A program made the translations under genes and the position numbers. From the NCBI GenBank assembly GCA_002269645.1, contig NIVC01001488.1:54784-118783 (forward strand): a DNA stretch of 64,000 nt, read 5' to 3'. Each line of letters starts with the position of its first letter. Position 1 is the first letter of the stretch. Origin of the DNA: Macrostomum lignano (lineage: Eukaryota). Under the pieces are notes generated by a model. That model made no database searches, was not told where the DNA came from, and saw only the letters and a program-made list of their open reading frames with translations. Positions 604 to 24,544 of this stretch are shown in pieces.

Positions 604-635
604 CTAACCCTAACCCTAACCCTAACCTAACCCTA
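604..635. repeat. Interstitial (TAACCC)n tract in A1
   Basis: About 5 units. Confidence 0.85.
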
Positions 636-3006: not shown

Positions 3007-3061
3007 CTAACCCTAACCCTAGCCTAACCCCAACCCTAACCCTAACCCTAACCTAACCCTA
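3007..3061. repeat. Interstitial (TAACCC)n tract in A2
   Basis: About 9 units, some variant. Confidence 0.85.
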
Positions 3062-3957
3062 AAGCATTGAAATTTCAGTAATTCTCTCTAAGAGTCATTA
3101 TAGCACTACTACAGCATTATAGCGATTCCCTGCAAGCCTCGACATCGTAGGGATTCCCAAATGAATATCTTAACTTCGACATGAAGCTTCTTTTATTTTT
3201 TACATTACGCTTTTTTAATCAGCGATCCCTCCCCTGAGGAGGCATCAAATAATGTAATAAAAAGTTTTCAATAAACTACATGTAGCTTCTGACTTTAGCC
3301 TTGAAATCTCATTTATACCCCCGTGAGCCTTGACATCTCAGCTATTCCCCCCGTAAGCCTTAACATGTCAGCGATGGCACCCATAAACCTTGAAATCTGA
3401 AAAATCCCCTGCTAACCTTGAAACTCGATAAAATATAACCCTCAACCCACACCTGACCTAAACCTAACTTTAACCCAACCTAAAGCCTTGAAATCTCAGC
3501 AATTCTTCTCCCCTAAGCCTTGACATTTTAGTGATTCCTTTAAGAATCACAGCACTATAACGATTTCCACCTAGCTTTGACATCGTAGCAATTCCCAAAT
3601 GAATCTTTTAACTTCGACATGACTCTTCTTTTATGTATACTTAGTGCTACTTTTATTTTTTACATGACTCTTCTTCTATCAGCGCCTCCCGTGGCGAGCC
3701 AACAAAGAATGCAATAAAAAAATTGAGTAAAGTACATGAACTTTGAATTAGCTTCTGACTTTTGCTTTGACATCTCAGAAACCCCCCCCGTAATCTCAGT
3801 TATTCTCTGAGAGCCTTGACGTCTCAGTAATTCTCCCCAGCACAGCATTATAGCTGCATTTAATTTTTCCATGACACCTTTCATGTCTGACATGACGCTT
3901 CTTTTATTCTACTATGATGCTTCTTAATTTTTTAAATGACACTTTCATTAGTTTTTA

Positions 3958-5112
3958 AATGACGCTTCTATGATTTTTCATGACGCTTCTATGATTTTTA
4001 CATGACGCTTCTATGATTTTTTACATGACGCTTCTATGATTGTTTACATGACGCTTCTATGATTGTTTACATGACGCTTCTATGATTTTTTAAATGACGT
4101 TTTTTGATTTTTATATGACGCCTCCATGATTGTTTACATGACGCTTTAATGATTTTTTCATGACGCTTCTATGATTTTTACATGACGCTTCTATGATTGT
4201 TTACATGACGCTTCTATGATTGTTTATATGACGCTTCTATGATTTTTTAAATGACGCTTCTACGATTTTTTACATGACGCTTTTATGATGTTTTAGATGA
4301 CGCTTCTATGATTTTTTACATGACGCTTCTATGATTTTTTACATGACGCTTCTATGATTGTTTACACGATGCTTCTATGATTTTTTACATGACGCTTCTA
4401 TGATTTTTTACATGACGCTTCTATGATTGTTTACATGACGCTTCTATGATTTTTACATGACGCTTCTATGATTGTTTACATGACGCTTCTATGATTGTTT
4501 ATATGACGCTTCTATGATTTTTACATGACGCTTCTATGATTTTTTACATGACGCTTCTATGATTTTTTACACGATGCTTCTATGATTTTTTACATGACGC
4601 TTCTATGATTTTTTACATGACGCTTGTATGATTTTTTACATGACGCTTCTATAATTATTTCATGACGCTTCTACGATTTCTGCAGGACGCTTCAATGATT
4701 TTTACATGACACCTCTATGATTTTTACATGACGCTTCTATGATTTTTACATGACGCTTCTATGATTTTTTATATGACGCTTCTATGATTGTTTATATGAC
4801 GCTTCTATGATTTTTTACATGACGCTACTATGATTTTTACATTACGCTTCTATGATTGTTTACATGACGCTTCCATGATTGTTTACATGACGCTTCTATG
4901 ATTTTTTACATGACGCTTCTATGATTGTTTACATGACGCCTCTATGATTTTTTACATGACGCTTCTATGATTGTTTACATGACGCTTCTATGATTTTTTA
5001 CATGACACTTCTATGCTTTTTACATGATGCTTCCACGATTTTTTACATGACACTTCCACGATTTTTTACATGACGCTTCTATGATTTTTTACATGACGCT
5101 TTTATGATTTTT
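3958..5112. repeat. 22-23 bp minisatellite (A2)
   Basis: Same unit as in A1; bounds approximate. Confidence 0.95.
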
Positions 5113-5944
5113 TTAGTTTTCTTGGCGTTAAAAAGCTTTAATTAAAAAACTCTACTCTCTAAAAATTCGAACCATCGTTTCTGCATTTAGCAGTTCAGTC
5201 TGTTTACCTCTAGGCTAGCTCTCATCGTTTTGATAACATGAATTCAGCACTTATAATTATAAGTTTCAAAACTCCAAGCATAGAGTAAATCACACGAGGC
5301 AGTTATTACATAATCAATTTCTCAGTCAGTCAGTATCAGTTAACAATATGGTTGCGCAATCTAAATCAAGTCTGGTGCTACGCTTCCACACTGCATTTTC
5401 AATACTGTGACGCAATTCAATTCGGAGTTACAATTCAGTTATGATGTAATCCATTTCAGAATCAGAATTCAACCAGTCAGTTTTTTCTCTAGCATTCTTA
5501 CAATGCATTTCAAGTCGAAAAGTTTGCTTGACCTTTGCAAAAAAGCATGTTTTTCGAATATTTAATCGCTTTAACATGGAGCAATTTCTTAGCCAAGATG
5601 CATGTACCGTCCCAGGAAAATTTCTGATCGAACAGTGCAAGTCTCATGAAAATCGGTCCAGCCATTTTTTCTCTAATCGATTGCGTACAAACAAACAACT
5701 CATTTTTAGTATATAGGACTAGCAATCTACGCCCCCCGTTGGGGAGCCAAAGAAATGCAATACACGTTTTTTTAATAAACTACATGTATCCTTGAAATCT
5801 TAAAAAATCTCCTGTCAAACCTTGTAAGCCTTGACATGTCAGTAATTCCCCCCCCCCACAAGCTTTAACATATCAACTTCCCCCCTTGACATCTCAGCAA
5901 TGCCCCAAATAAGCCTTGGAAATCTAAAAATATCTGTCAACCTT

Positions 5945-6005
5945 CTAACCCTAACCCTAGCCTAACCCTAACCCTAACCCTAACCCTAACCCTAACCTAA
6001 CCCTA
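5945..6005. repeat. Interstitial (TAACCC)n tract in A3
   Basis: About 10 units. Confidence 0.85.
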
Positions 6006-6934
6006 AAGCATTGAAATTTCAGTAATTCTCTCTAAGAGTCATTATAGCACTACTACAGCATTATAGCGATTCCCTGCAAGCCTCGACATCGTAGAGATTC
6101 CCAAATGAATCTCTTAACTTCGACATGAAGCTTATTTTATTTTTTACATTACGCTTTTTTTATCAGCGATCCCTCCCAGAGGAGGCATCAAATAATGTAA
6201 TAAAAAGTTTTCAATAAACTACATGTAGCTTCTGACTTTAGCCTTGAAATCTCATTTATACCCCGTGAACCTTGACATCTCAGATATTCCCCCCGTAAGT
6301 CTTAACATGTCAGCGATGGCCCCATAAACCTTGAAATCTAAAAAATCCCCTGTTATTCTGTTAACCTTGAAATCCGATAAAATATAACCCTCAACCCACA
6401 CCTGACCTAAACCTAACTTTAACCCAACCTAAAGCCTTGAAATCTCAGCAATTCTTCTCCCCTAAGCCTTGACATTTTAGTGATTCCTTCTTTAAGAATC
6501 ACAGCACTATAACGATTTCCCCAAGCTTTGACATCGTAGCAATTCCCAAATGAATCTTTTAACTTCGACATGACTTTTCTTTTATGTATACGTAGTGCTA
6601 CTTTTATTTTTTACATGACTCTTCTTCTATCAGCGCCCCCCCCGTGGCGAGCCAACAAATAATGCAATAAAAAATTGAGTAAAGTACATGACTTTGAATT
6701 AGCTTCTGACTTTTGCTTTGACATCTCAGAACCCCCCCCCCCCCGTAATCTCAGTTATTCTCTGAGAGCCTTTACGTCTCAGTTTTTCTCCCCAGCACAG
6801 CATTATAGCTGCATTTAATTTTTACATGACACCCTTCATGTCTGACATGACGCTTCTTTTATTCTACCATGATGCTTCTTAATTTTTTAAATGACACTTT
6901 CATTAGTTTTTAAATGAGGCTCCTATGATTTTTT

Positions 6935-8170
6935 CATGACGCTTCTATGATTTTTACATGACACTTCTATGATTTTTTATATGACGCTTCTATGATTGTT
7001 TATATGACGCTTCTATGCTTTTTACATGACGCTTCTATGATTTTTACATAACGCTTCCATGATTGTTTACATGACGCTTCTATGATTGTTTACATGACGC
7101 TTCTATGATTTTTTAAATGACGCTTCTATGATTATTTCATGACGCTTCTACGATTTCTGCAGGACGCTTCAATGATTTTTACATGCCGCTTTTATGATTT
7201 TTACATGACGCTTCTATGATTGTTTACATGACGCTTCTATGATTGTTTATACGACGCTTCTATGATTTTTACATGACGCTTCTATGCTTTTTACATGACG
7301 CTTCTATGATTGTTTACATGACGCTTCTATGATTGTTTCATGACGCTTCTATGATTGTTTACATGACGCTTCTATGATTGTTTACATGACGCTTCTATGA
7401 TTGTTTTCATGACGCTTCTATGATTGTTTATACGACGCTTCTATGATTTTTACATGACGCTTCTATGATTTTTACATGACGCTTCTATGATTTTTTACAT
7501 GACGCTTCTATGATTGTTTCATGACGCTTCTATGATTGTTTACATGACGCTTCTATGATTTTTTACATGACGCTTCTATGATTGTTTACATGACGCTTCT
7601 ATGATTGTTTATACGACGCTTCTATGATTTTTACATGACGCTTCTATGCTTTTTACATGACGCTTCTATGATTTTTTACATGACGCTTCTATGATTGTTT
7701 CATGACGCTTCTATGATTTTTTACATGACGCTTATATGATTGTTTACATGACGCTTCTATGATTTTTTACATGACGCTTCTATGATTGTTTACATGACGC
7801 TTCCATGATTTTTTACATGACGCTTCTATGATTGTTTACATGACGCTTCTATGATTGTTTACATGACGCTTCTATGATTGTTTACATGACGCTTCTATGA
7901 TTGTTTACATGACGCTTCTATGATTTTTATATGACGCTTCTATGATTGTTTACATGACGCTTCTATGATTGTTTACATGACGCTTCTATGATTGTTTAAA
8001 TGACGCTTCTATGATTGTTTACATGACGCTTCTATGATTTTTTACATGACGCTTCTATGATTGTTTACATGACGCTTCTATGATTTTTTACATGACGCTT
8101 CTATGATTGTTTACATGACGCTTCTATGATTTTTTACATGACGCTTCTATGATTTTTACATGACGATTCT
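6935..8170. repeat. 22-23 bp minisatellite (A3)
   Basis: Same unit, with the ATTGTTTA variant enriched; bounds approximate. Confidence 0.95.
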
Positions 8171-8929
8171 TTTTAAAAAGTCTTTTAGTTTTCCTGACGT
8201 TGAAAAGCTTTAATTAAAAAATTATACTCTATGAAAATCGAACCATCGTCGCTGCATTTAACAGTTCAGTTTGTTCACCTCTAGGCTAGCTCTCATCGTT
8301 TTGATAACATCAAATTTTGCACTTATATAATTCAACACTTTAAAATCCAAGCATAGAGTAAATCACACGAAGCAGTTATGACATAATCAGTTTCTCAGTC
8401 AGTCAGTATCAGTTAACAATATGGTTACGCAATCTAAATCAAGTCTGGTGCTACGCTTCCACACTGCATTTTCAATTCAAGTCGGAGTTACAATTCAGTT
8501 ATGATGCAATCTATTTCAGAATCAGAATTCAACCAGTCAGTTTTTTCTCTAGCATTCTTACAATGCATTTCAAGTCGAAAAGTTTGCTTGACCTTTGCAA
8601 AAAAGCATGTTTTTCGAATATTTAATGCCTTTAGCATCAAGAAATTTCTTAGCCACGATGCATGTACAGTCACGGGAAAATTTCTGATTGAACAGTGCAA
8701 GTTCGAACAAAATCGGTACAGCCATTTTTTCTCTAATCGATCACATAGACACAGACAGACCATTTTTAGTATATAGGACTAGCAATCTTCGCCCCCCGAT
8801 GGGGGACATCTGGATAGAATCTCTGTTCTCTACAATTAACAAAAAGACAGCCAAAAAATCCTTCACAAAGACAACAGACAAACTGCTCAAATGAAGTGAA
8901 TTGCAATAAGAAATCTTCCCAAGACCACA

Positions 8930-9420
8930 AGCATCCCCCAGATAGCAAGCATCCTCCAGATAGCAAGCATTCTCCCAGATAGCAAGCATTTCCCAGATAG
9001 CAAGCATCCCCAAGATAGCAAGCATCCTCCAGATAGCAAGCATCCCCAGATAGCAAGCATCCCCCAGATAGCAAGCATCCCCCAGATAGCAAACATCCCC
9101 AGATAGCAAGCATTCCCCAGATAGCAAGCATTCCGCAGATAGCAAGCATCCCCAGATAGCAAGCATCCCCAAGATAGCAAGCATCCCTCAGATAGCAAGC
9201 ATACCCCAAGATAGCAAGCATCCCTCAGATAGCAAGCATACCCAGATAGCAAGCATCCCCAGATAGCAAGCATCCCCAGATAGCAAACATCCCCAGATAG
9301 CAAGCATCCCCCAGATAGCAAGCATTCCCCAGATAGCAAGCATTCCCCAGATAGCAAGCATCCCCAGAAAGCAAGCATCCTCCAAATAGCAAGCATCCCC
9401 AAGATAGATAGCATCCCCAA
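8930..9420. repeat. 18-19 bp minisatellite CAGATAGCAAGCATCCCC (B1)
   Basis: Direct tandem array; bounds approximate. Confidence 0.95.
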
Positions 9421-9534
9421 ATAGCAACCATCCACCAGACAATAAGTAGCTAGAGCGACAATTTCCTTAGCTTTATAGTGGCTCCTTTAAATTGGCATGG
9501 CGCTTTATACCTTTACATTTGAAATTGGATATCT

Positions 9535-12500
9535 TGAATGTTTGACATGGTGGCTCTTTTATGTTTGACATAGTGGCTCTTCTATGTTTGACATGGTGGC
9601 TCTTTTATGTTTGACATAGTGGCTCTTTTATGTTCGACATGGTGGCTCTTCTATGTTTGACATGGTGGCTTTTTTAGGTTTGACATGGTGGCTCTTTTAT
9701 GTTTGACATGTTGACTTTTTTATGTTCGACACGGTGGCTTTTTAATGTTCGACATGGTGGCTCTTTTAGGTTTGAACCGGTGGCTCTTTAATGTTTGACA
9801 TGGTGGCTCTTTAATGTTCGACATGGTGGCTCTTTTATGTTCGACATGGTGGCTCTTTAATGTTTGACATGGTGGCCCTTTAATGGTTAACATGGCGGCT
9901 CTTTAATTTTCGAAATGGTGGCTCCTTAATTTTCGAAATGGTGGCTGTTTTATGTTTGACATGGTGGCTCTTTAATGTTCGACATGGTGGCTCTTTAATG
10001 TTTGACATGGTGTCTGTTTTATGTTTGATATGGTGGCTCTTTAATGTTCGACATGGTGGCTCTTTAATGTTTGACATGGTAACTATTTTATGTTTGATAT
10101 GGTGGCTCTTTAATGTTCGACATGGTGGCTCTTTAATGTTCGACATGGTGGCTCTTTAATGTTCGACATGGTGGCTCTTTAATTTTTAACATGGTGACTC
10201 TTTTATGTTCGACATGGTGGCTCTTTTATGTTTGACATAGTGGCTCTTCTATGTTTGACATGGTGGCTCTTTAATGTTTGACATGGTGGCTCTATTATGT
10301 TTGACATGGTGGCTCTTCTATGTTTGACATGGTGGCTTTTTTAGGTTTGACATGGTGGCTCTTTTATGTTTGACATGTTGGCTTTTTAATGTTCGACATG
10401 GTGGCTTTTTAATGTTCGACATGGTGGCTCCTTTAGGTTTGAAATGGTGGCTCTTTAATATTTGACAAGGTGGCTCTTTAATGTTCGACATGGTGGCTCT
10501 TTTAGGTTTGAACCGGTGGCTCTTTAATGTTTGACATGGTGTCTGTTTTATGTTTGACATGGTGGCTCTTTAATGTTCGACATGGTGGCTCTTTAATGTT
10601 CGACATGGTGGCTCTTTAATTTTTAACATGGTGACTCTTTTATGTTCGACATGGTGGCTCCTTAAGGTTTGAAATATTGGCTCTTTAATGTTTAACATGG
10701 TGGCTTTTCTATGTTCGACATGGTGGCTTTTCTATGTTCGACATGGTGGCTCTTGTATGTTCGACATGGTGGCTCTTTTAATGGTCGACATGGTGGCTCT
10801 TTAATGTTCTTCATGTTGGCTCTTTTATGTTTGACATGGTGGCTTTTTTATGTTTGACATGGTGGCTCTTTTATGTTCTACATAGCTGCTCTTTTATGTT
10901 CGACATTGTGGCTCTTGTATGTTCGACAGGGTCGCTCTTTTAGGTTTGAAATGGTGGCTCTTTAATATTTGACAAGGTGGCCCTTTAATGTTTAACATGG
11001 CGGCTCTTAAATTTTCGAAATGGTGGCTGTTTTATATTTGACATGGTGGCTCTTTAATGTTCGACATGGTGGCTCTTTAATGTTCTTAATGGTGTCTGTT
11101 TTATGTTTGACATGGTTGCTCTTTTATGTTCGACATGGTGGCTCTTTAATTTTTAACATGGTAACTCTTTTATGTTTGATATGGTGGCTCTTTTATGTTC
11201 GACATGGTGGCTCTTGTATGTTCGACATGGTGGCTTCTTTAGGTTTGAAATGGTGGCTCTTTAATATTTGACAAGGTGGCTCTTTAATGTTCGACATGGT
11301 GGCTCTTTTAGGTTTGAAATGGTGGCTCTTTAATATTTGACAAGGTGGCTCTTTAATGTTTGACATGGTGGCTCTTTAATGTTCGACATGGTGGCTCTTT
11401 AATGTTTGACATGGTAACTCTTTTATGTTTGATATGGTGGCTCTTTTATGTTCGACATGGTGGCTCTTTAATGTTTGACATGGTGGCTCTTTAATGTTTG
11501 ACATGGTAACTCTTTTATGTTTGATATGGTGGCTCTTTAATGTTCGACATGGTGGCTCTTGTATGTTCGACATGGTGGCTTCTTTAGGTTTGAAATGGTG
11601 GCTCTTTAATATTTGACAAGGTGGCTCTTTAATGTTTGACATGGTGGCTCTTTAATGTTTGACATGGTGGCTCTTTTAGGTTTGAAATGGTGGCTTTTTA
11701 ATGTTTGACAATGTGGCTCTTTAATGTTTGACATGGTGGCTTTTTAATGTTCGACATGGTGGCTCTTTTAGGTTTGAACCGGTGGCTCTTTAATGTTTGA
11801 CATGGTGGCTCTTTAATGTTTGACATGGTGTCTGTTTTATGTTTGACATGGTGGCTCTTTAATGTTCGACATGGTGGCTCTTTTAGGTTTGAACCGGTGG
11901 CTCTTTAATGTTTGACATGGTGGCTCTTTAATGTTTGAAATGGTGGCTCTTTAATGTTCGACATGGTGGCTCTTTAATTTTTAACATGGTGACTCTTTTA
12001 TGTTCGACATGGTGGCTCCTTTAGGTTTGAAATATTGGCTCTTTAATGTTTAACATGGTGGCTTTTCTATGTTCGACATGGTGGCTTTTCTATGTTCGAC
12101 ATGGTGGCTCTTGTATGTTCGACATGGTGGCTCTTTTATGTTCGACATGGTGGCTCTTGTATGTTCGACAGGGTCGCTCTTTTAGGTTTGAAATGGTGGC
12201 TCTTTAATATTTGACAAGGTGGCCCTTTAATGTTTAACATAGCGGCTCTTAAATTTTTGAAATGGTGGCTCCTTAATTTTCGAAATGGTGGCTGTTTTAT
12301 ATTTGACATGGTGGCTCTTTAATGTTCTTAATGGTGTCTGTTTTATGTTTGACATGGTGGCTCTTTAATTTTTAACATGGTGGCTCTTTTAGGTTTGAAA
12401 CGGTGGCTCTTTAATGTTTGACATGGTGACTCTTTAATGTTTGACATGGTGGCTTTTCTATGTTCGACATGGTGGCTCTTGTATGTTCGACATGGTGGCT

Positions 12501-13150
12501 TCTTTAGGTTTGAAATGGTGGCTCTTTAATATTTGACAAGGTGGCTCTTTAATGTTCGACATGGTGGCTCTTTAATGTTTGACATGGTGGCTCTTTTAGG
12601 TTTGAAATGGTGGGTCTTTAATGCTTGACAATGTGGCTCTTTAATGTTTGACATGGTGGCTCTTTAATGTTCGACATGGTGGCTCTTTAATGTTTGACAT
12701 GGTAACTCTTTTATGTTTAATATGGTGGCTCTTTTATGTTCGACATGGTGGCTCTTTAATGTTTGACATGGTGGCTATTGAATGTTTGACATGGTAACTA
12801 TTTTAGGTTTGAAATGGTGGGTCTTTAATGCTTGACAATGTGGCTCTTTAATGTTTGACATGGTAACTCTTTTATGTTTGATATGGTGGCTCTTTTATGT
12901 TCGACATGGTGGCTCTTTAATTTTCGACATGGTGGCTCCTTTAGGTTTGAAATGGTGGCTCTTTAATGTTTGACATGGTGGCTCTTCTATGTTCGACATG
13001 GTGGCTCTTTAATGTTCGACATGGTGGCTCTTTAATTTTTAACATGGTAACTCTTTTATGTTCGATATGGTGGCTCTTTTATGTTCGACATGGTGGTTCT
13101 TTAATGTTCGACATGGTGGCTCCTTTAGGTTTGACATGGTGGCTCTTCTA
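9535..13150. repeat. 23 bp minisatellite ACATGGTGGCTCTTTAATGTTTG (B1)
   Basis: Tandem array of ~3.6 kb; bounds approximate. Confidence 0.95.
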
Positions 13151-13914
13151 TTGCGCTTTTTTTATGTTTAGCAGTTTTTTAGTTTTTAAGGTGTTTTAAT
13201 AAAAAAATTATTTTGCGCTTCTAAGACTCGAACCCAGGTCGCTACATTAGCATTCCAGTCTGTTCGCATCAGGGCTATCTCTTTTCAATTGGAGAACATG
13301 AATTGTGGCCCTTATAATTCAATTCTTACAGCAAGTCAATTGGAGTAAAAAGTTATGACATAATCAATTTCTCAGTCAGCCAGTATCAGTCTCACTTCGA
13401 GTTAGCAATATGGTTACGCAATTTCAATCAAGTCGTGTGTGCATTTCTTCGGCACTGTTTTCAACTTGTTGTGATGCAATCTTTATCAGAATTGAAATTC
13501 AGTCAGTCAGTTTTTTCTCTAGCATTCTTACAATGCATTTCAAGTCGAAAATTTTGCTTGACCTTTGCAAAAAAGCGTGTTTTTCGAATATTTAATCCCT
13601 TTAACATTGAGCAATTTCTTAGCCAAGATGCATGTACTGTGCCAGGAAAATTTCTGATCGAATGATGCAAGTTTGAAGAAAATCGGTTGAGCCGTTTTTT
13701 CTGAAATCAATCGCATACCCATATACATACATACATACAGACAACTCATTTTTAGTATATAGGACTAGCAATCTTCGCCCCCCGATGGGGGGCATCTAGA
13801 TAGAATCTCTGGCACTCTACAAGTATCAAAAAGACGGCCAAATAAAGCCTTCACATAGACAATAGAAAAACTGCTCAAATGAAGTGCAATGCAAAAAAAT
13901 ATCCCAGGACAGCA

Positions 13915-14915
13915 AGCAACCCCCCAGATAGCAAGCACCCCCAGATAGCAAGCATCCACCTAATAGCAAGCACCCTTAGATAGCAAGCATCCCCAGATAG
14001 CAAGCATCTCCAGATAGCAAGCACCCCCAGATAGCAGGCACCCCAGATAGCAAGCATCCACCTAATAGCAAGCACCCTTAGATAGCAAGCACCCCCAGAT
14101 AGCAAGCACCCCCAGATAGCAAGCACCCCAAGTAGCAAGCATCTCTAGATAGCAAGCACCCCCAGATAGCAGGCACCCCAGATAGCAAGCATCCACCTAA
14201 TAGCAAGCACCCCAAGATAGCAAGCAATTACCTAATAGCAAGCACCCTTAGATAGCAAGCACCCCCAGATAGCAAGCACCCCCAGATAGCAAGCATCTCC
14301 AGATAGCAAGCACCCCCAGATAGCAAGCATCCACCTAATAGCAAGCACCCCCAGATAGCAAGCATCCACCTAATAGCAAGCATCCACCTAATAGCAAGCA
14401 CCCCCAGATAGCAAGCACCCCCAGATAGCAAGCATCTCTAGATAGCAAGCACCCCCAGATAGCAGGCACCCCAGATAGCAAGCATCCACCTAATAGCAAG
14501 CACCCCCAGATAGCAAGCATCTCCAGATAGCAAGCACCCCCAGATAGCAGGCACCCCAGATAGCAAGCATCCACCTAATAGCAAGCACCCCCAGATAGCA
14601 AGCACCCCCAGATAGCAAGAACCCCCAGATAGCAGGCACCCCAGATAGCAAGCATCCACCTAATAGCAAGCACCCCCAGATAGCAAGCACCCCCAGATAG
14701 CAAGCACCCCCAGATAGCAAGCACCCCCAGATAGCACGCATCTCCAGATAGCAAGCACTCCAAGATAGCAGGCACCCCAGATAGCAAGCATCCACCTAAT
14801 AGCAAGCACCCCCAGATAGCTAGAACCCCCAAGATAGCAAGCATTCCCCCAGATAGCAAGCACCCCCAGATAGCACGCATCTCCAGATAGCAAGCACTCC
14901 AAGATAGTAGGCACC
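13915..14915. repeat. 18-19 bp minisatellite CAGATAGCAAGCACCCC (B2)
   Basis: Direct tandem array; bounds approximate. Confidence 0.95.
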
Positions 14916-14921
14916 CCATTT

Positions 14922-16610
14922 ATGTTTGACATGGTAGCTGTTTTGTGTCTGACATGGTGGCTCTTTAATGTTTGAGCTGGTGGCTCTTTTATGTTTGACA
15001 TGGTGGCACTTTAATGTCTGAAATGGAGTCATGTATACGCTTGACATGGTGACTCGTAGATGTTTGACAAAGTGGCTCTTTTATGTTCGACATGTGGCTC
15101 TTTAATGTTTGACATGGTGGCTCTTTAATGTTTGACATGGTGGCTCTTTAATGTTTGACATGGTGGGTCTTTAATTTATGACATGGTGGCTCTTTTATGT
15201 TTGACATGATGGCTCTTTAATGTTCGACATGGTGGCTGTTTAATGTTTGTTATGTAGTCATATGTATATGTTTTACATGGTGGCTCTTTTATGTGTGACA
15301 TGGAGTCACGTATATATTTGACATGGAGTCACATATGTTTGACATGGTGGCTCTTTAGTGTTCGATATGGTGGCTCTTTAATGTTTGACATGGTGGCTCT
15401 TTTATGTTTGACATAGTGGCTCTTTAATGTCTGACATGGTGGCTCTTTAATGTTTGACATGGTGGCTCTTTTATGTTTGACATGATGGCTCTTTAATGTT
15501 CGACATGGTGGGCTGTTTAATGTTTGTTATGTAGTCATATGTATATGTTTTACATGGTGGCCCTTTTATGTGTGACATGGAGGCACGTATATATTCGACA
15601 TGGAGTCACATATGTTTGACATGGTGGCTCTTTAGTGTTCGATATGGTGGCTCTTTAATGTTTGACATGGTGGCTCTTTAATGTCTGACATGGTGGCTCT
15701 TTAATGTTTGACATGGTGGCTCTTTTATGTTCGACATGTTGGCTCTTTAGTGTTTGACATGGCTCTTTAATGTTTGACATGGTGGCTCTTTTATGCTTGA
15801 CATGGTGGCTCTTTAATGTTCGACATGGTGGCTCTTTAATGTTTGACATGGTGGCTCTTTTATGCTTGACATGGTGGCTCTTTTATGTTTGACATGGTGG
15901 CTCTTTTTTGTTCTACATGGTAACTCTTTTATGTTTGATACGGTGGCTTTTTAATATCTGACATTGTGGCTCTTCTATGTTTGACATTGTGGCTCTTTTA
16001 TGTTTGACATGGTGGCTCTTTAATGTTTGACATGGTGGCTCTTTAATGTACGACATAAAGGTTCGTTTATGTTCGACATGGTGGCTCTTTTAGGTTTGAC
16101 ATGGTAGCTCTTTTATGTTCGACATGGTGGCTCTTTTAGGTTTGACATGGTGGCTCTTTTAGTTTTGACATGGTAGCTCTTTTATGTTCGACATGGTGGC
16201 TCTTAAATGTTTCACATGATGGCTCTTAAATGTCTTACATGGTGGCTCTTTTATGTTTGACAATGTGGCTCTTTAATGTTTTACATGGCGGCTCTTTTAT
16301 GTTCGAAATGGTGGCTCTTTAATGTTCGACATGGTGGCTCTTTAATGTTTGACATGCTAGCTCTTTAATGTTCGACATAGTGGCTCTTTTATGTTTGGCA
16401 TGGTGGCTCTTTAATGTTCTTCATGGTGGCTCTTTTACGTTTGACATGGTGGCACTTTAATGTTCGACGTGGTGGCTCTTTAATATTCGAAATGGTGACT
16501 CTTTAATGTTTCACATGGTGGCTCTTTAATGTTTGACATAGAGTCACGTATTTGTTTTACATGGTGCCCATGTAATGTTTGACATGGTGCCTCTTTTATG
16601 TTTGACATTG
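14922..16610. repeat. 23 bp minisatellite (B2)
   Basis: Same unit as the B1 array; bounds approximate. Confidence 0.95.
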
Positions 16611-16667
16611 TGCTTTTTTATGTTTAGCAGTTTCGTGTTTTCAAGGTGTTTTATAAAAAAATTATTT

Positions 16668-16735
16668 TGCACTACTAAGATTCGAACCCAGGTCGCTACG
16701 TTGGCAGTCCAGTCTGTTCGGATCTAGGCTATCTC
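16668..16735 (-). other. tRNA-like (Pol III box A/box B) module in B2; homologues at ~2685-2750, 5155-5221, 8225-8291, 13213-13281
   Basis: The - strand reads GATAGCCTAGATCCGAACAGACTGGACTGCCAACGTAGCGACCTGGGTTCGAATCTTAGTAGTGCA, followed closely by a T7 run. The acceptor stem does not pair. Confidence 0.6.
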
Positions 16736-17226
16736 TTTTCAATTGGAGTACATGAATTGTGGCCCTTATAATTAAATTCTTACAGCAAGTCAATTGGGGT
16801 AAAAAGTTATGACATAATCAATTTCTCAGTCAGCCAGTATCAGTCTCAGTTCAAGTTAGCAGTATTGGTTACGCAATTTTAATCAAGTCGTGTGTGCATT
16901 TCTTCGGCACTGTTTTCAACTTGTTGTGATGCAATCTTTATGACAATCAGAATTCAGCCAGTCAGTTTTTTTCTCTAGCATTCTTACAATGAATTTTAGG
17001 TCGAAAGAGCTGCTTGACCTTTGCAAAAAAGCATGTTTTTCGAATATTTAATCCCTTTATCATTGAGCAATTTTTTAGCCAAGATGCATGTACCGTCCCA
17101 GGAAAATTTCTGATCGAATGGTGCAAGTTTGAAGAAAATCGGTTGAGCCATTTTTTCTGAAATCTATCGCATACCTACCCACATACAGACAACTCATTTT
17201 TAGTATATAGGATTAGTATATTTAGA

Positions 17227-17695
17227 TTATTATAAGTTTCAAAACTCCAAGCATAGAGTAAATTACACGAGGCAGTTATGACATAATCAATTTCTCAGTC
17301 AGTCAGTATCAGTTAGCAATATGGTTACGCAATTTGAATCAAGTCTGGTGCTACGCTTCCACACTGCATTTTCAATACTGTGACGCAATTTAAGTCGGAG
17401 TTACAATTCAGTTATGATGCAATCTATTTCAGAATCAGAATTCAACCAGTCAGTTTTTTCTCTAGCATTCTTACAATGCATTTCAAGTCGAAAAGTTTGC
17501 TTGACCTTTGCAAAAAAGCATGTTTTTCGAATATTTAATCCCTTTAACATGGAGCAATTTCTTAGCCAAGATGCATGTACCGTCACTGGAAAATTTCTGA
17601 TCGAACAGTGCAAGTCTCATGAAAATCGGTCCAGCCATTTTTTCTCTAATCGATTACAAGCAAGCAAGCAAGATTTTCATTTTTAGTATATAGGA
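17227..17695 (-). mobile_element. Helitron host copy A1, 5' part
   Basis: Resumes with TTATTATAAGTTTCAAAACTCCAAGC, the continuation of GCACTTA seen intact at ~5247-5280, and ends TATATAGGA. Confidence 0.75.
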
Positions 17696-17752
17696 TTTGC
17701 ATGTACTACTATACTTTGGCAAAGCTGATGCATAAGAAATTCAAATTTTCAG

Positions 17753-18952
17753 ACACGGCTGAATGTCGAACAACGTTCTCAGGAGAGGATTAAGTTGGAT
17801 CTAAGAGCTCAGCTATCATCTATCAGCGCTCAAATATAGCGCTGGAGTCAGAGAACATCACTGCAATTAAACTTCCGCCACTCAGGTCCCAAGTGCGGTG
17901 CATGAATTGGAACGATGCTGCTCGGAAATTGAAACGAAGAAGTGCTGAAGCACTTGCTGACAAGCTGCTCGCGCTTAACTACTCAAACAGCGAGTCAAGG
18001 TGCCGCTCTCCCCCTGGCCTACCTCTGACGGAGTTTTTAACCATAGCGAACCGTAAGTGCCAAGCGTTCCAACAAAACATCTACATAAGTTGGTTAACTT
18101 TCAATCCACGCCTTGAATCCCAGGTCCACTACTGAAACTGCTTGGATGCTATGCTGCAAACTCGACCGGCTTTGAGTTCAACTTTACTTGCGGCACCGGC
18201 GGGCTGGTCAGCCACGAGGCCTGCGCCGACTGCTGCGGTCTCCTTGGATACTCGCACATCGGGCTGCAGCCCGGCAGCTGCCTCTGTGGCAACGGCTTTC
18301 CCGGCTCGGGCAACAGCAGTAGCAACAGCAGCATCTGCAACAGCAGCTGCATCAGCAACCGGAAGCAGGCCTGCGGATCGCCGACTGCCGTAACCGTGAT
18401 ACAGATTGCGGACACGGGTGGGTTGTTTGGTTAAAAGTCGCAAAATCTTTATTTTTAAGCATCATTCTACAAGCTAATTCCATATTTTCAGGGATATTAG
18501 TCACAATTGAGTCGGAATAAATAAACTATTTATTTAATTAGAGTTGAAAACAGAAAGTAAGTGTGGCGCAGGGCTTAAACGGGTATAATAACAAGGCAAT
18601 AAATTAGAGGGAGAGGTTGGGTGCAGATAAGAAAAGGAGGGGGTGGAATGCGCGACTGAGGAAAGAGGCGAGACTGAAGAGCCAATCAGAAGGCGTCAAG
18701 GGAGAGAGAGAGAAGAGACAAGACCTGAACAAGACAGAGGGAGAGAAAACAAGTAAACAGATACAAGTGCAAACAAACTGAATAAGTGGCTAAGAAAGCC
18801 GCGAAATTGACGAATCATTCCGCTTACAGAACCGAAGCCTTTGCAAATCGGAAACTTCAGCAATCTGACAGTCTTATCTAACGGGCCGTATTGTTTCTTT
18901 TTGGATGAGCTTGATAAACTGAATGCAGCCTTCTGTGACATTCCGTTTTGCC
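17753..18952 (+). CDS. Kringle domain 1, split over exons 17753-18052 and 18830-18952
   Basis: Six-Cys kringle pattern: ECRTTFSGED*VG..RCMNW..SRCRSP..|..GPYCF..AFCDIPFC. The stop sits at the conserved Tyr of G-x-x-Y-x-G. Confidence 0.8.
18124..18417 (+). CDS. WSC domain exon (294 nt, phase 1-1)
   Basis: cccag| acceptor, |gtgggt donor, stop-free. Reads LLGCY...SHEACADCCGLLGYSHIGLQPGSCLCGNG...ICNSSCISNRKQACGS, with all eight WSC cysteine positions. Missing from the ORF track because this frame has no start codon. Confidence 0.85.
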
Positions 18953-19026: not shown

Positions 19027-19581
19027 CTACTGCCAGCGCCTTTGATTGCATAGTAAGCTCCGATGAAGAGGTCGTTCAAAAGCAGCAGCGAGCAAAGTAT
19101 ACTGGTCGAAAAAATGTTTCCTCTACCGGAAAGCCGTGCTTGCCATGGAGCTCGCTTGAAGAAAGCATGTCGAGGCGCTTCTTTTTCGGTTTGTTTGAAC
19201 CGAACAAGTCATTTTGAATTCTGTCTGAAGGCACTGATAAAATCTTTTTTGATTTTTCTTTCAGGACCATACAATTTTCTCGGCTTTGACATTCGAACGC
19301 CCGACTACAGTGAACAAGGTGGCGAAAATTTTTGTCGATCAGTTGAAATCATAGCGGAAGATAGCGTTGAATCCAGAGTAAAACGGTATAATATACGTAC
19401 TTTTCTTTGAACATTGATTAGGTAAATGCATTTGCCTCAAGTCATACGTACCGCCCCTCACGTGGTTGCTTCAGTCGGTATCCGATTGCTTTTTCTGACA
19501 CACCTGTGTGCGCCGTGAACACTGGAGCTGCCGTTGCGTTCGCGAACGTTGAGCTTGAGCCATGCGACATTGCATACTGCT
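19027..19581 (+). CDS. Kringle domain 2 (three exons)
   Basis: FDC..KYTGRKNVSSTGKPCLPWS..|GPYN..ENFCRS..|..TPVCAV..EPCDIAYC. The internal junction near 19377-19475 is uncertain. Confidence 0.8.
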
Positions 19582-19685
19582 GTAATTATGCCAAATGTTG
19601 TAGCTATAGTCGAAGAATAAGAGCGTAATGCAGTCTCAACAACAATAAAATTAACCGCAATTAAACTCTGCGCCCATAGATTCAG

Positions 19686-22160
19686 CAGTACCGACTGTGA
19701 CAGGGGCCATCAGGGACTCGGTCGGGAGCCACCTGCTGGCACGCCAGTTCGGCAGCGACCTCAGTATCAGCCTTGCGAACTGCAGCTTCGCTGGTCAGAA
19801 ATGCACAAAGGATGACTTTTTGAACATTGCCCACCCCCAGCTGGGCATGTGCCATCAGTTTCTCAAGCAGCGTTTCACTGCCAGCATGACCAGCAGGCAA
19901 CAGGCCCAGAGTCAGCTGTCAATCAAGTACTTTACTGACGCAACCGACTCGAAGGGACAGATGGTAGCCAACATGGATCAACTGGCTGGAGTCGTGCACG
20001 GCAGCGTGGATTCCGATGCCAGCCGAATTGCATTCAAGGGAGGAATTTTCGCCTAAACTTTTCAGGGACCAACTTTTCAGGAAACTGGAAACTGATGGTC
20101 CAATAGGAGCTGGGAGACCACAGAGGGGCGCAGCCAGGGGGAGGGCAATGGCACCGCGGCCCCATCCCCAGTAAGTAACAGAAATTATGGTGCCCTTTTC
20201 CAGCTGACTGGCGCCTCCTTCAAGACAGCTTTAGTGCCCCTCACAATGGGTTGGGCACCCTCTGTTCCTAATTTTAGCATTACCTTAACAACTAGTTTGC
20301 CTTTGGCGCCAATGGTACTGGCGCCACTACTGGTGCTGTCGCCCACGAAAAGCACGGATCATCAATAATAAATCCTTGCTTCGCTCTAGGACCTCAGAAA
20401 ACGGAGTAGACGACGAGAAATTATGAACCATGCAAGATTTTCTTCTCTTTTTAAGTCCACCAAGCCGTCTCCCTATCATTGTCTTCATCTTACAGGCGAT
20501 AATCGTTCCGGAGAGCAGCTTCCCCTGGCCATCGAAGGGCATCGACGTAGCCGCTGCTCAACGCATGGATGTGCAGCTGAGACTCGATAAATTCTCCAAA
20601 CTCTCCACCGCTCGGAGACCCTGCTCGGAGGTTCCCGAGCCAATTGTGTACCGGCTACCGTCGTGGAAGCAGGCCGATTCGAACAAGGAATTGGAGTAAG
20701 TGCGAAAGTGCTCTACCTGCCATGGTAGCAAGCACTGTTTTAAGAATACCATTAATTTTGTAATAACACTTCAGCATGAGTACGGATCTTGAGGCGGTAG
20801 TCTCTGCCGCCGATTGGAAACAAAGGCTCGCACACTTTCAAATGATGCTGGAAACTCTGAACAGCTCCAGGTTTGTTTAAGAAAAAAGGCTTCACAAAGG
20901 ACAAATTTTTTAAGTTCCAAATATTTATTGATTTTTAGAGCTTTAACTGGAGTAGACAAAGTATTCAGCTACACTGACATGGAGGACTGCATCAACACCT
21001 ACGTTGTCGAGAAGTTCATCGATAAATGCCGCTGCTTGCCCTCGTTTTTGCCTGTCCGAGCCGATTTCTTTGCAAGACATGCTTACTGCTTCGACACCCA
21101 AACTATGCCAAATATTTCCACGGAAACCGACTTATGCTTCAGGAATCAAGTCGCGAATCTGGTGCAGTACCAGTTCGATGCCGTCAGCCTCTGCAAGGCT
21201 GCGTGCTACACAACTGATTTCAGCGCCCGGCACATTACGTATCCGTGGCCGAATCTGAACAGCTTCCGGTCGCTGGCGTTTTTGAAGAACCTCGCCTTTG
21301 CCCTCGGATACGGCAGCAGTCCGAGTGGCCTCAGGGGAATCAACAGCGTCTACTGCGCCTATTTGAGATCGCTGAACTTCACTCAATCGCCAGCCAGTAT
21401 GAGGAACCCGCTGGACATTCTCAGCTTCGACAGCGAGCTGACGGCACTTCAAAACAGACTTGCCCAGCTAACAGTTCAGGCCTGGACATCGTACGGACAG
21501 GAGGTCTCAGAGGAAGAGGCTTATCCCGCCAAGAACCTTCTGGCTGACATTGGAGGTTAGATAACAAGTTTGCTAACGAAATTGTTTCCTAGTACTCGTA
21601 ACTAAATGTTCGATTCGCTTGTAATTGAAAAACTGGCCCAAAGGTTGTCGTACGATTCACATCCACGAAGGCCAACCCCCAAGGAACCCGGAAGTGTACA
21701 TGTCTGACGATTAGAAAGTCAAGGCCGCTGTTAATCCCGTGTGAGCGTGAGGGAGGCTGGTTCAGCGATTCAAGCCAGTGAAAGCTATCCCTAGCCGGAC
21801 CATTCAAAGCATTGTCGAGTCCAAAGAGGTTTTACTTACGTGCTGTGGCAAATCTTTTTAAGTAAATTTTATCTGCATAAAAACCAAGAAGTTATCGATA
21901 CTTTTTGCAAGTAAACCTTCAATTTTACTTTAGGAGCCCTTGGTCTCTGGTCCGGAATTTCTATTCTGACTGCCTGCGAACTGTTTGAGCTTCTGCTCTA
22001 CTTTGCGCTGGCTGTGGGAGCTCGAATGCGCGAGTGTCGTCAGGCAGCCACCGGCTCTGCTGGGCACCTGCAAGGACCTGCAGTTTTGAGTAGCGGCAGC
22101 AGGCCGACTGTGCGAGCCGACGATGTTGAATTGAAAATTGATGCAGACTCCAAGCTGTGA
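19686..22160 (+). CDS. DEG/ENaC palm, beta-ball, thumb, knuckle and TM2 exons
   Basis: ORFs 19697-20056, 20430-20699 and 20814-21560, plus terminal exon 21934-22160 with GLWSGIS. Confidence 0.92.

Positions 22161-22610: not shown

Positions 22611-24544
<1,934 letters not shown>

What the first reader, a model, noticed from the sequence alone, without database searches (positions are those of the whole stretch)
18124..18417. WSC domain inserted inside a kringle as a skippable symmetric exon
Seen: the 294-nt phase 1-1 exon lies between kringle-1 Cys3 (CRSP) and Cys4 (PYC). It has a good acceptor, and its upstream intron is 71 nt, the size typical of this gene. Skipping it restores a contiguous in-frame kringle. 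Inference: a domain nested within a disulfide-knotted kringle loop is unusual (Kremen has the two domains in series). It could act as an alternative-splicing switch for ligand specificity.
Basis: partly seen in the sequence, partly recalled or inferred. Interest (0 to 1): 0.75.

Follow-up and report, generated by a model that had tools for sequence, protein, structure and literature searches.

The report
WSC domain nested in a kringle
The 294-base exon is real and encodes a sugar-binding-type WSC domain sitting inside a loop of a kringle-like domain in the outer part of a flatworm (Macrostomum lignano) sodium-channel gene family; this layout has not been described, but nothing shows the exon is a splicing switch, and the copy in this window carries two premature stop codons.

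Summary
Window 18124-18417 is a 294-nt, phase 1-1 exon with AG/GT borders and a 71-nt upstream intron. It encodes a WSC domain (Pfam 35.9 bits, cut-off 27.8). It lies between Cys3 and Cys4 of a divergent kringle (profile-profile probability 96.5%, all six Cys aligned).

The gene is not Kremen-like. It is a DEG/ENaC (ASC) channel of Macrostomum lignano. A kringle[WSC]-kringle module of about 370 residues is inserted in its finger region.

The same nested layout, with the WSC on its own phase 1-1 exon at the same borders, occurs in at least six other M. lignano paralogue groups. It was found in no other organism among 1.84 billion representative proteins. The NCBI gene models among them are transcript-based and include the exon; no model skips it.

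Phase symmetry is shared by exons 2-5, the usual mark of shuffled modules, so it is not evidence of a switch.

The window's own copy has two in-frame TAA codons, both at invariant Tyr (TAC in paralogues). It has also lost a donor, has weak donors and has no annotated product. It is probably a young pseudogene, or holds consensus errors.

Verdict: a real, conserved, undescribed domain nesting in a lineage-specific channel family. The splicing-switch reading is unsupported.

The parts
18124..18417 (+). Exon 3 of my model: 294 nt, phase 1-1, encodes the whole WSC domain (model residues about 222-319)
   Evidence: Splice sites and frame. Pfam WSC 35.9 bits. Homologous single exons of 291, 303, 276 and 312 nt in four M. 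lignano paralogue loci. In the paralogue P0002 the WSC fold is supported by AlphaFold2 plus Foldseek.
17753..18052 (+). Exon 2: N-terminal half of kringle-like domain 1 (Cys1, G-x-x-Y-x-G, Cys2-x-W, Cys3 'CRSP') plus the invariant linker PPGLPLxEF; 300 nt, phase 1-1
17791..17793 (+). In-frame TAA at the kringle's conserved Tyr (SGED*VGS; paralogues have GEEY with TAC)
18053..18123 (+). 71-nt intron before the WSC exon
   Evidence: An intron lies at the same place in the paralogues, 82-632 nt long.
18418..18829 (+). 412-nt intron after the WSC exon (GA-rich low-complexity sequence)
18830..18952 (+). Exon 4: C-terminal half of kringle-like domain 1 (GPYC = Cys4, FC = Cys5, IPFC = Cys6); 123 nt, phase 1-1
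   Evidence: The paralogue exons are 123-129 nt.
19027..19581 (+). Exons 5-7 (19027-19188, 19265-19385, 19475-19581): kringle-like domain 2, which has its own insert of about 30-40 residues in the Cys3-Cys4 loop
   Evidence: hhalign probability 97.0%, E 9.5e-11. UniProt names the matching paralogue fragments 'Kringle domain-containing protein'. The junction was corrected by homology.
1..364 (+). Exon 1 (cut by the window start): TM1, FPDV*ICP strand and first finger helix of a DEG/ENaC channel; holds an in-frame TAA at 133-135
365..17752 (+). 17.4-kb intron 1, filled with 23-nt and 17/18-nt satellites and five copies of a dispersed repeat of about 450 nt
19680..22160 (+). Exons 8-12 (19680-20005, 20496-20695, 20775-20870, 20939-21555, 21934-22160): rest of the ASC ectodomain, TM2 (GLWSGISILT), C-terminus, stop TGA
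   Evidence: Pfam ASC 110.6 bits. Alignment to paralogues. Closest solved relatives are FaNaC 7yvb and 8on7.
20042..20043 (+). GG where all mapped paralogues have the GT donor after '...AFK'. An in-frame substitute donor exists at 20005/20006.

Best explanation
SHOWN. The exon encodes a WSC domain nested in the Cys3-Cys4 loop of the first of two divergent kringle-like domains. The kringle[WSC]-kringle module is itself inserted in the finger region of a DEG/ENaC cation-channel subunit, between the first finger helix and the segment before the 'CxFxGxxC' motif (ASC Pfam positions about 130-147). The genome is Macrostomum lignano. The family has at least seven paralogue groups there and was seen in no other organism. 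Each module piece sits on its own exon, and exons 2-5 are all phase 1-1.

INFERRED, origin and splicing. The layout arose by exon shuffling: a 1-1 WSC exon entered an intron that split the kringle loop. It has been kept as a fixed part of the protein. The evidence fits constitutive inclusion of the exon.

INFERRED, function. The termini of a WSC fold lie side by side (strands beta1 and beta5 are neighbours), so the domain can hang from a loop while the kringle's three disulfides close around its base. This would give one compact kringle-WSC unit, as in Kremen1, where the two domains together form one ligand surface. On the finger, which is the lever that opens FaNaC when its peptide binds, such a unit would most likely couple binding of a glycan, matrix or protein partner, or tension on it, to gating.

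INFERRED, this locus. The copy in this window probably makes no full-length protein. It has two premature TAA codons upstream of and beside the exon, a lost donor, weak donors and no annotated product. It is a young pseudogene in a redundant neopolyploid genome, unless the lesions are consensus errors.
For: - Exon anatomy and frame.
- WSC: Pfam 35.9 bits above the cut-off. All eight standard WSC Cys columns are shared with 40 unrelated WSC domains, and there is a family-specific extra Cys pair. Best solved-structure sequence matches are Kremen1 at 8.6e-6 and yeast Wsc1 at 1.3e-5.
- Structure: an AlphaFold2 model of the paralogue P0002 (kringle 1 + WSC) has pLDDT 83.3 and pTM 0.74. Foldseek matches it to Wsc1 7pz2 (TM 0.70-0.75, rmsd 2.3-3.7 A) and Kremen1 5fws (E 7e-6).
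- Kringle homology: hhalign 96.5% for kringle 1 without the WSC and 97.0% for kringle 2. The template set matches Pfam Kringle 8 of 8. Multi-kringle proteins reach E 2e-21 against the module profile.
- Channel: Pfam ASC 110.6 bits. FaNaC is the closest solved relative, and the module falls between FaNaC residues about 161 and 196. The finger is the ligand pocket and gating lever in FaNaC (PMC11026163).
- Conservation: same layout in P0001, P0002, P0005/P0177, P0006 and P0157. In the partial P0010 and P0013 the WSC is followed by the kringle 1 C-half. Among the 150 best module hits, only M. lignano proteins also carry an ASC domain.
- The WSC exon is 34% identical among paralogues, like the kringle 2 exons at 28-34%.
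- Exon borders and phase are identical in four loci.
- The annotation is transcript-based (PMC5730564).
- WSC topology beta1-beta5-beta3-beta4-beta2, and the kringle-WSC joint ligand surface in Kremen1 (PMC5014086).
- Organism: the rootletin ORF is 100% identical to an M. lignano protein, and 9.7 kb of DNA is 98.8% identical to a Mlig_3_7 contig.
- Lesions. Each annotated paralogue exists as three near-identical genes, but the window's paralogue appears in none of them.
- Three subgenomes (PMC10733133).
Against: - No RNA-seq junction counts were available, so minor skipping cannot be excluded. The WSC exon's donor is on the weak side in the window and in two of four paralogues (4.3-4.6 against a mean of 8.4).
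- Pfam's Kringle model is not reached by either kringle (16.6-17.9 bits against 34.3).
- Foldseek found no kringle match for the split domain. That the two halves fold as a kringle therefore rests on sequence profiles and on the confidence of an AlphaFold2 model whose coordinates I could not inspect.
- The structure model is of a paralogue, not of the window's protein.
- One paralogue (P0009/P0019) has the WSC but no kringle 1 C-half in its models, so a closed kringle may not be essential.
- The function is pure inference.
- Against a pseudogene: there is no frameshift in 2937 nt, all Cys are kept, and only three conservative changes occur at the other 111 family-invariant sites.
Confidence: 0.7

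Rival explanations
1. The WSC exon is a cassette exon. Inclusion or skipping switches the channel's extracellular module between a WSC-bearing form and a plain-kringle form, changing ligand specificity.
For: Phase 1-1, so skipping is in frame. The skip product still aligns as a kringle. The donor GTGGGT is weaker than average, at 4.6 against 8.4 +/- 2.2. Gene models in the family do show in-frame variation of neighbouring pieces: a 63-nt intron is kept in P0001, and the kringle 1 C-half exon is absent in P0009/P0019.
Against: No model out of more than 20 lacks the exon, including all members of the 90%-identity clusters. Exons 2-5 are all 1-1, so symmetry is not specific to this exon. The WSC is as conserved as its neighbours. 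The linkers on both sides (PPGLPLSEFF; PL...GPYC) are conserved and make a 37-residue loop that would be left without its domain after skipping. The window's copy has a stop codon before the exon.
Confidence: 0.1
2. The gene in the window is functional. The two TAA codons and the GG donor are consensus errors of the assembly or alleles of one subgenome copy, or the TAA codons are read through (near-cognate tRNA-Tyr would restore the ancestral residue).
For: Both TAA codons lie exactly at Tyr positions that are invariant and encoded by TAC in all four mapped paralogues. The rest of the coding sequence looks fully constrained: no frameshift, all Cys kept, and three conservative changes at 111 invariant sites. 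The neighbouring actin gene has a single 1-nt deletion in a C run in an otherwise intact ORF. Compared with the Mlig_3_7 contig there are 13 one-base gaps in 9.7 kb, 10 of them in homopolymers, so small errors or variants exist in these assemblies.
Against: TAC to TAA is a substitution, not the indel type seen elsewhere. TAA ends the annotated paralogues P0002 and P0006, and unmodified eGFP is expressed in M. lignano (PMC5730564), so the genetic code is standard. No product of this locus appears in any annotation, although each expressed paralogue appears three times. Several donors are far below the family norm (GTTTGT twice, GTGGAT; the 44-nt intron with a GTAAAA donor scored was later replaced by an 89-nt intron with a GTATAA donor).
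Confidence: 0.25
3. The flanks are only a kringle relic. The two halves no longer fold together, and the WSC is simply one of several cysteine-rich pieces strung along the finger, so there is no true nesting in three dimensions.
For: Pfam Kringle is below its cut-off. There is a 22-residue insert between the G-x-x-Y-x-G motif and Cys2, and predicted helices between Cys2 and Cys3 that are unlike a canonical kringle. Foldseek gave no kringle hit. The paralogue P0009/P0019 lacks the C-half.
Against: All six Cys and the W, CR-P and PYCF motifs are invariant in the six full-length family members aligned. The profile-profile alignment is end to end and collinear. AlphaFold2 gives pLDDT 81-96 to both halves and pTM 0.74 for the whole unit. 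Foldseek aligns sequentially and cannot match a domain split by 100 residues.
Confidence: 0.12

Closest known systems
Kremen1/2 ectodomain (kringle - WSC - CUB; PDB 5FWS)
   Same: It has the same two domain types. The WSC of this family has Kremen1 as its best solved match by sequence (8.6e-6) and by fold (E 7e-6). In Kremen1 the kringle and WSC pack tightly and together form the Dkk-binding surface (PMC5014086), which is the kind of unit a nested arrangement would enforce.
   Different: In Kremen the domains follow each other after the kringle is closed. Here the WSC sits inside the kringle's Cys3-Cys4 loop. There is no CUB domain and no single-pass receptor. The carrier is a two-TM trimeric-channel subunit. 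The kringles are far more divergent.
DEG/ENaC channels, FaNaC branch (PDB 7YVB, 8ON7)
   Same: The ASC domain is well above the Pfam cut-off (110.6 bits). TM1, the FPxV(x)IC strand, the cysteine-rich ectodomain and the GLWxGxS TM2 motif are present. FaNaC is the best solved relative (2.7e-13). The finger is the most variable part and the ligand site in this superfamily (PMC11026163).
   Different: No described DEG/ENaC carries kringle or WSC domains. Here about 370 extra residues are inserted in the finger. The three M. lignano channels tested by others belong to a different set of genes (Mlig049925, Mlig051885). No function is known.
Yeast Wsc1 cell-wall stress sensor (PDB 7PZ2) and fungal WSC proteins
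   Same: The WSC fold matches (TM 0.70-0.75, rmsd 2.3-3.7 A for the paralogue model; sequence E 1.3e-5). Wsc1 is a surface sensor of mechanical stress (PMC9024836), which suggests a sensor role.
   Different: In Wsc1 the WSC is a terminal head on a stalk, not a domain inserted in another domain. This family has an extra Cys pair that was absent from 39-40 of the 40 WSC domains compared.
Module shuffling through phase 1-1 exons in extracellular proteins (own knowledge: Patthy's rules; kringle, PAN, EGF and FN modules of the blood proteases)
   Same: The WSC and the neighbouring module exons 2-5 are phase 1-1 and multiples of 3.
   Different: Shuffling normally places modules between domains. 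Here the receiving intron lay inside a domain, giving a domain-in-domain product.

Membership tests
WSC domain (Pfam PF01822) | Profile match above the curated cut-off | tested here: met
   35.9 bits for the exon alone and 29.2 bits in the full model, against a cut-off of 27.8. Paralogues score 26.4-41.4 bits.
WSC domain (Pfam PF01822) | Eight conserved cysteines in the standard pattern | tested here: met
   In the MAFFT alignment, all 40 unrelated WSC domains compared have Cys at the eight standard columns where the family (window exon included) has Cys. The family adds one extra pair.
WSC domain (Pfam PF01822) | PAN-like fold: five-stranded antiparallel sheet plus one helix | tested here: met
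   Tested on the paralogue P0002, not on the window's protein. AlphaFold2 pLDDT is 79-93 over the domain. Foldseek gives TM 0.70-0.75 to Wsc1 7pz2 and probability 1.00 to Kremen1.
Kringle domain (Pfam PF00051) | Profile match above the curated cut-off | tested here: not met
   16.9 bits (kringle 1 without WSC), 17.9 bits (kringle 2) and 16.6 bits (full model), against 34.3. I therefore call the domains kringle-like, meaning homologous but divergent.
Kringle domain (Pfam PF00051) | Six cysteines with flanking motifs (G-x-x-Y-x-G, C-x-x-W, C-R-x-P, P-W/Y-C, C-x-I/V-P-x-C) in canonical order | tested here: met
   hhalign against eight kringles validated by Pfam: 96.5% and E 9e-10 for kringle 1 (all six Cys aligned); 97.0% and E 9.5e-11 for kringle 2, aligned from the G-x-x-Y-x-G motif to Cys6, with its Cys1 lying before the aligned stretch.
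Kringle domain (Pfam PF00051) | Short Cys3-Cys4 loop (10-12 residues) and triple-disulfide fold | tested here: inconclusive
   The loop is 135 residues with the WSC and 37 without it. AlphaFold2 is confident for both halves. I could not read the coordinates, and Foldseek found no kringle match for the split domain.
DEG/ENaC (Pfam ASC PF00858) | Profile match above the cut-off; two TM segments; G-x-S filter motif in TM2 | tested here: met
   110.6 bits against 23.6. TM1 lies at the window start, and TM2 reads 'GALGLWSGISILTACE'. The N-terminal HG motif lies outside the window but is present in the paralogues ('TTAHGLGRF').
DEG/ENaC (Pfam ASC PF00858) | Intact reading frame (a working gene at this locus) | tested here: not met
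   In-frame TAA at 133-135 and 17791-17793, and a lost GT donor at 20042-43.
Kremen family | Serial kringle-WSC-CUB ectodomain on a single-pass receptor | tested here: not met
   The WSC lies inside the kringle. No CUB hit was found. The carrier is an ASC channel.
Alternatively spliced cassette exon | Length a multiple of 3, or symmetric phase | tested here: met
   294 nt, phase 1-1, but this is shared with exons 2, 4 and 5.
Alternatively spliced cassette exon | Existence of transcripts or isoforms without the exon | tested here: not met
   None among the M. lignano models that cover the region, including members of the 90%-identity clusters. This is a weak test, because minor isoforms may not be annotated.
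Alternatively spliced cassette exon | Junction reads for inclusion and for skipping | not testable with these tools
   No RNA-seq data could be reached.
Pseudogene | Disabling lesions and no product | tested here: inconclusive
   In favour: two nonsense codons, a lost donor, weak donors and no annotated protein. Against: no frameshift and near-perfect conservation at invariant sites.

The most novel reading that the evidence does not exclude
The kringle[WSC]-kringle unit is a built-in lectin-like or matrix-binding sensor on the finger of a DEG/ENaC channel. Binding of a glycan or protein partner, or tension through it, would move the same lever that peptides move in FaNaC. That would be a new gating mode for this channel superfamily. 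In-frame use or omission of the 1-1 module exons (WSC, kringle 1 C-half) would then tune it between paralogues or isoforms.
Probability: 0.15. Interest if true: 0.7.

Novelty: new variant of a known kind. Interest (0 to 1): 0.45.

Why it matters
DEG/ENaC channels are opened by very different stimuli: protons, peptides, proteases and force. The finger region is where much of that diversity arises.

A family whose finger carries two kringle-like domains, one of them with a WSC domain hanging from a disulfide-locked loop, is an extreme natural case of adding sensor modules to this channel scaffold. It offers a concrete candidate for a channel coupled to glycans or to the extracellular matrix.

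For protein evolution it is a clean example of a domain-in-domain architecture. A phase 1-1 exon landed in an intron inside a small disulfide-knotted domain, and the exon borders have been kept across paralogues only 32-35% identical.

M. lignano is transgenic-ready, so the function can be tested.

The limits are plain. The family was seen in one species only, nothing is known about its function, and the copy in this window is probably dead.

Tried and rejected
- A word-indexed homologue search with the 204-residue kringle 1 + WSC peptide found nothing. Only the full model found relatives.
The skip isoform could not be folded.
- The first AlphaFold2 run, with a 3-sequence alignment, was useless (pLDDT 36).
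- Adding canonical kringles to the alignment failed. MAFFT aligned their cysteines onto the WSC, so they were left out.
- Sequence-profile searches of kringle 1 without the WSC, and of kringle 2, against PDB sequences gave only weak hits, mostly kringles (E 0.02-0.6).
When it ran, it saw the WSC but not the split kringle.
- TAA recoded as Tyr, as in the alternative flatworm mitochondrial code, was considered and rejected. TAA ends annotated paralogues, unmodified eGFP works in this animal, and no tRNA gene lies in the window.
- A scan for single in-frame stops across the window was uninformative, because GC-rich repeats give long chance ORFs.
- There is no second copy of the gene or of the WSC exon in the window, so mutually exclusive exons are ruled out.
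- There is no actin gene downstream of the P0002 locus, so synteny gave nothing.
- Literature searches for kringle or WSC in DEG/ENaC channels, for nested kringles and for the gene identifiers returned nothing relevant. The M. lignano channels tested in PMC9234716 are other genes.
- My first exon 6/7 junction (a 44-nt intron) was wrong. It was replaced by the homologous junction with an 89-nt intron.
Full report
**1. What is at the coordinates**

The sequence shows an exon at 18124-18417. It is preceded by cttgaatcccag| and followed by |gtgggttg. The upstream exon ends at 18052 (|gtaagtgc), which leaves a 71-nt intron. The next exon starts at 18830 after ttacag|.

The exon is 294 nt. It begins and ends in phase 1, and it is open in that frame. 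Its 97 residues match Pfam WSC over 80 of 82 model positions at 35.9 bits (cut-off 27.8).

The upstream exon ends ...SESRCRSPPGLPLTEFLTIAN. The downstream exon reads PKPLQIGNFSNLTVLSNGPYCFFLDELDKLNAAFCDIPFC.

**2. The gene is a DEG/ENaC channel, not a Kremen relative**

Downstream ORF pieces match Pfam ASC. The very start of the window encodes TM1 and the FPxVxIC strand.

Stitching by splice sites, and later by homology, gives 12 exons within the window:
- 1-364
- 17753-18052
- 18124-18417
- 18830-18952
- 19027-19188
- 19265-19385
- 19475-19581
- 19680-20005
- 20496-20695
- 20775-20870
- 20939-21555
- 21934-22160

Together they make 2937 nt and 978 residues. The 5' end lies outside the window.

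Pfam on the model gives ASC 110.6 bits, WSC 29.2 bits and Kringle 16.6 bits.

The order along the protein is TM1, first finger helix, kringle-like 1 (with the WSC inside), kringle-like 2, the rest of the ASC ectodomain, then TM2. The module replaces ASC profile positions of about 130-147.

In the best solved relative, FaNaC 7yvb (2.7e-13), the module falls between residues about 161 and 196. That is the finger. In FaNaC the finger forms the peptide pocket and moves to open the pore, and it is the most divergent part of the superfamily (PMC11026163).

**3. Are the flanks a kringle?**

Pfam alone says no: 16.9 and 17.9 bits against a cut-off of 34.3.

Profile against profile says yes. Six family sequences with the WSC removed align end to end with eight canonical kringles at probability 96.5% and E 9e-10. 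Cys1 to Cys6 and the G-x-x-Y-x-G, C-x-W, CR-P, PYCF and C-x-IP-x-C motifs are all in register. The eight template kringles all pass Pfam Kringle.

There are two inserts relative to the templates: 22 residues before Cys2, and 27 residues in the Cys3-Cys4 loop.

The second kringle gives 97.0% and E 9.5e-11, and it too has an insert in the Cys3-Cys4 loop.

The module profile also finds multi-kringle proteins of an ostracod at E 2e-21. UniProt names two family fragments 'Kringle domain-containing protein'.

I call the domains kringle-like: homologous and clearly divergent.

**4. Relatives**

A full HMM scan of 1.84 billion representative proteins with the module profile found the complete nested module, or parts of it joined to an ASC domain, only in M. 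lignano proteins. These are P0001, P0002/3, P0004/5/P0177, P0006/P0153, P0008/P0157, P0009/P0019, P0010, P0013, P0072 and P0075. Every other hit is a plain WSC protein (fungi, a diplonemid) or a plain kringle protein.

The paralogues are 32-56% identical to the window's protein. All that cover the region have the WSC at the same place.

Per-exon identity among six paralogues is 0.34 for the WSC. It is 0.44 and 0.46 for the kringle 1 halves, 0.28-0.34 for kringle 2, and 0.42-0.52 for the channel core (computed before the exon 6/7 junction was corrected). The exon is therefore under constraint like its neighbours.

**5. Exon structure elsewhere**

In four M. lignano loci (L001-L004) the WSC is always one exon of 291, 303, 276 or 312 nt. 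It is always in phase 1-1 and at the same borders. The kringle 1 C-half exon is 123-129 nt.

In the window, exons 2, 3, 4 and 5 are all 1-1. Symmetry is thus a property of the whole module. It is the known mark of shuffled extracellular modules (own knowledge) and says nothing specific about skipping.

The NCBI models (BOX15_Mlig...) come from a genome-guided transcriptome (PMC5730564). Inclusion of the exon therefore has transcript support in four paralogues. No model without the exon exists in the 90%-identity clusters where it would fall.

Scored with a matrix from 45 family introns, the window exon's acceptor is average (6.6 against 7.9 +/- 2.2). Its donor is rather weak (4.6 against 8.4 +/- 2.2), as in two of the four paralogues. 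This is a faint hint at most.

**6. Structure**

With three sequences, AlphaFold2 failed (pLDDT 36).

A second run used 48 alignment rows: the 12 family rows plus 36 unrelated WSC domains. Canonical kringles had to be left out because MAFFT misaligned them.

This model of P0002 kringle 1 + WSC reached pLDDT 83.3 and pTM 0.74. Values were 86-96 for the Cys2-Cys3 part and its linker, 79-93 for the WSC, and 81-87 for the C-half. Only the family-specific insert was low.

Foldseek against the PDB returned Kremen1 (E 7e-6), yeast Wsc1 (TM 0.70-0.75, rmsd 2.3-3.7 A) and a fungal glyoxal oxidase with a WSC domain. It returned no kringle. That is expected for a domain split by 100 residues, but it means the kringle fold itself is not structurally confirmed here.

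In Kremen1 the WSC sheet order is beta1-beta5-beta3-beta4-beta2, so the first and last strands are neighbours and the termini are close. This is what an inserted domain needs. In Kremen1 the kringle and WSC also form one rigid unit and one ligand surface (PMC5014086).

**7. How it most likely works**

- Shown: the architecture, its conservation and its position in the finger.
- Inferred, origin: a 1-1 WSC exon entered an intron inside the kringle's Cys3-Cys4 loop in an ancestor of the family and became a fixed part of the ectodomain.
- Inferred, function: the unit binds a glycan, a matrix component or a protein, and passes binding or tension to the finger, which controls gating in this superfamily.
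- Precedents for the inference: Wsc1 is a mechanosensor head (PMC9024836), and ENaC is tethered to the matrix for shear sensing (PMC6955349).

No experiment bears on this, so I rate the specific function low (0.15).

**8. The copy in the window**

The organism is M. lignano. A rootletin ORF of the window is 100% identical to BOX15_Mlig001435g6. A stretch of 9.7 kb matches a Mlig_3_7 contig at 98.8%, which is the level of divergence between this neopolyploid's three subgenomes (PMC10733133).

The window's paralogue is in no protein set (best identity 56-57%). Yet each annotated paralogue appears as three near-identical genes.

Its reading frame holds two TAA codons, at 133-135 (FPDV*ICP) and 17791-17793 (SGED*VGS). 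Both fall where every paralogue has Tyr encoded by TAC.

The donor after ...AFK is GG instead of GT. Three donors are far below the family norm (GTTTGT twice, GTGGAT).

On the other side, there is no frameshift and all cysteines are kept. At the other 111 family-invariant sites the window differs only three times, conservatively.

I read this as a very young pseudogene in a redundant genome (about 0.6). Consensus errors or read-through are the alternative (about 0.25). A changed genetic code is rejected, because TAA ends the paralogues P0002 and P0006 and unmodified eGFP is expressed.

Either way, a stop codon precedes the WSC exon at this locus.

**9. Comparison and novelty**

By domain content the closest known protein is Kremen, but its domains are serial, it has a CUB domain, and it is a receptor. 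By scaffold the closest is the FaNaC branch of DEG/ENaC, which has no such modules.

I found no report of kringle or WSC domains in a DEG/ENaC channel, or of a domain nested in a kringle. The M. lignano channels tested by others are different genes.

The proteins sit in databases as 'WSC domain-containing protein' or 'hypothetical protein'.

This is a new variant of known kinds: a channel family and two domain families in a new arrangement. It is not a new kind of system.

**10. Verdict**

The nesting is real, conserved and undescribed. The splicing switch has no support and is moot for this copy.
- Interest is moderate, 0.45. The arrangement is a surprise for channel and domain-architecture specialists and can be tested in a tractable animal. 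Against that, it is known from one species, it has no functional data, and the copy seen here is probably dead.

Noticed in passing
window 133-135 and 17791-17793: The only two in-frame stops of the 2937-nt coding sequence are both TAA. Both lie at Tyr positions that are invariant in the family and encoded by TAC in all four mapped paralogues. The rest of the coding sequence looks fully constrained. The cause is unexplained: a young pseudogene, consensus errors or read-through.
   Followed up: partly
window 20042-20043: The donor after '...RIAFK' reads GG where the four mapped paralogues have GT. An in-frame substitute donor (AGC|GTGGAT) lies 36 nt upstream. Three donors of this gene score far below the family norm.
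   Followed up: partly
window 22907-24544 (+): A divergent actin gene (Pfam Actin 485 bits, using a translation I repaired by hand at the frameshift) lies about 750 nt downstream of the channel gene. Its first intron (about 23030-23540) holds 25 copies of an 18-nt repeat. A 1-nt deletion in a C run at about 23716 (GTGGCCCCGAGGAG) breaks the frame inside RVAPEEHP in an otherwise intact ORF.
   Followed up: partly
window 365-17752: Intron 1 of the channel gene is 17.4 kb long. It is almost entirely 23-nt and 17/18-nt satellite arrays plus five copies (77-95% identical) of a dispersed repeat of about 450 nt, at 5277-5718, 8350-8778, 13351-13711, 16805-17214 and 17250-17700. The last copy ends 52 nt before exon 2. 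A short (CCCTAA)n run lies at about 600-640.
   Followed up: partly
window 19027-19581: The second kringle-like domain also has an enlarged Cys3-Cys4 loop (about 30-40 extra residues, with no recognisable domain). The same loop is therefore the expansion point in both kringles of the family.
   Followed up: partly
M. lignano proteins P0009 and P0019; P0001: Two models of one paralogue have the WSC followed directly by kringle 2, without the kringle 1 C-half exon (123 nt, phase 1-1). P0001 keeps a 63-nt in-frame intron just before its WSC exon. These may be annotation artefacts or real in-frame variation of the module.
   Followed up: no
window about 33000-58000 (-): A rootletin/CEP250-like coiled-coil gene lies on the minus strand. 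The exon at 47786-48526 is 100% identical to M. lignano BOX15_Mlig001435g6. Window 51255-60936 matches the Mlig_3_7 contig NIVC01003132.1 at 98.8%, with 85 substitutions and 16 gaps, 10 of the 13 one-base gaps being in homopolymers.
   Followed up: partly
window 35489-36997, 40832-41752, 51255-52788, 58188-59075, 60510-61591 and others: Many long minisatellite arrays (periods 16-49 nt, 20-64 copies) are scattered through the gene-bearing half of the window, several of them inside introns of the rootletin-like gene.
   Followed up: no
WSC exon 18124-18417 and paralogues: The family's WSC has ten cysteines. The two extra ones ('FTC' and the first C of 'CC') were absent from 39-40 of the 40 unrelated WSC domains compared, which suggests a fifth, family-specific disulfide.
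   Followed up: no
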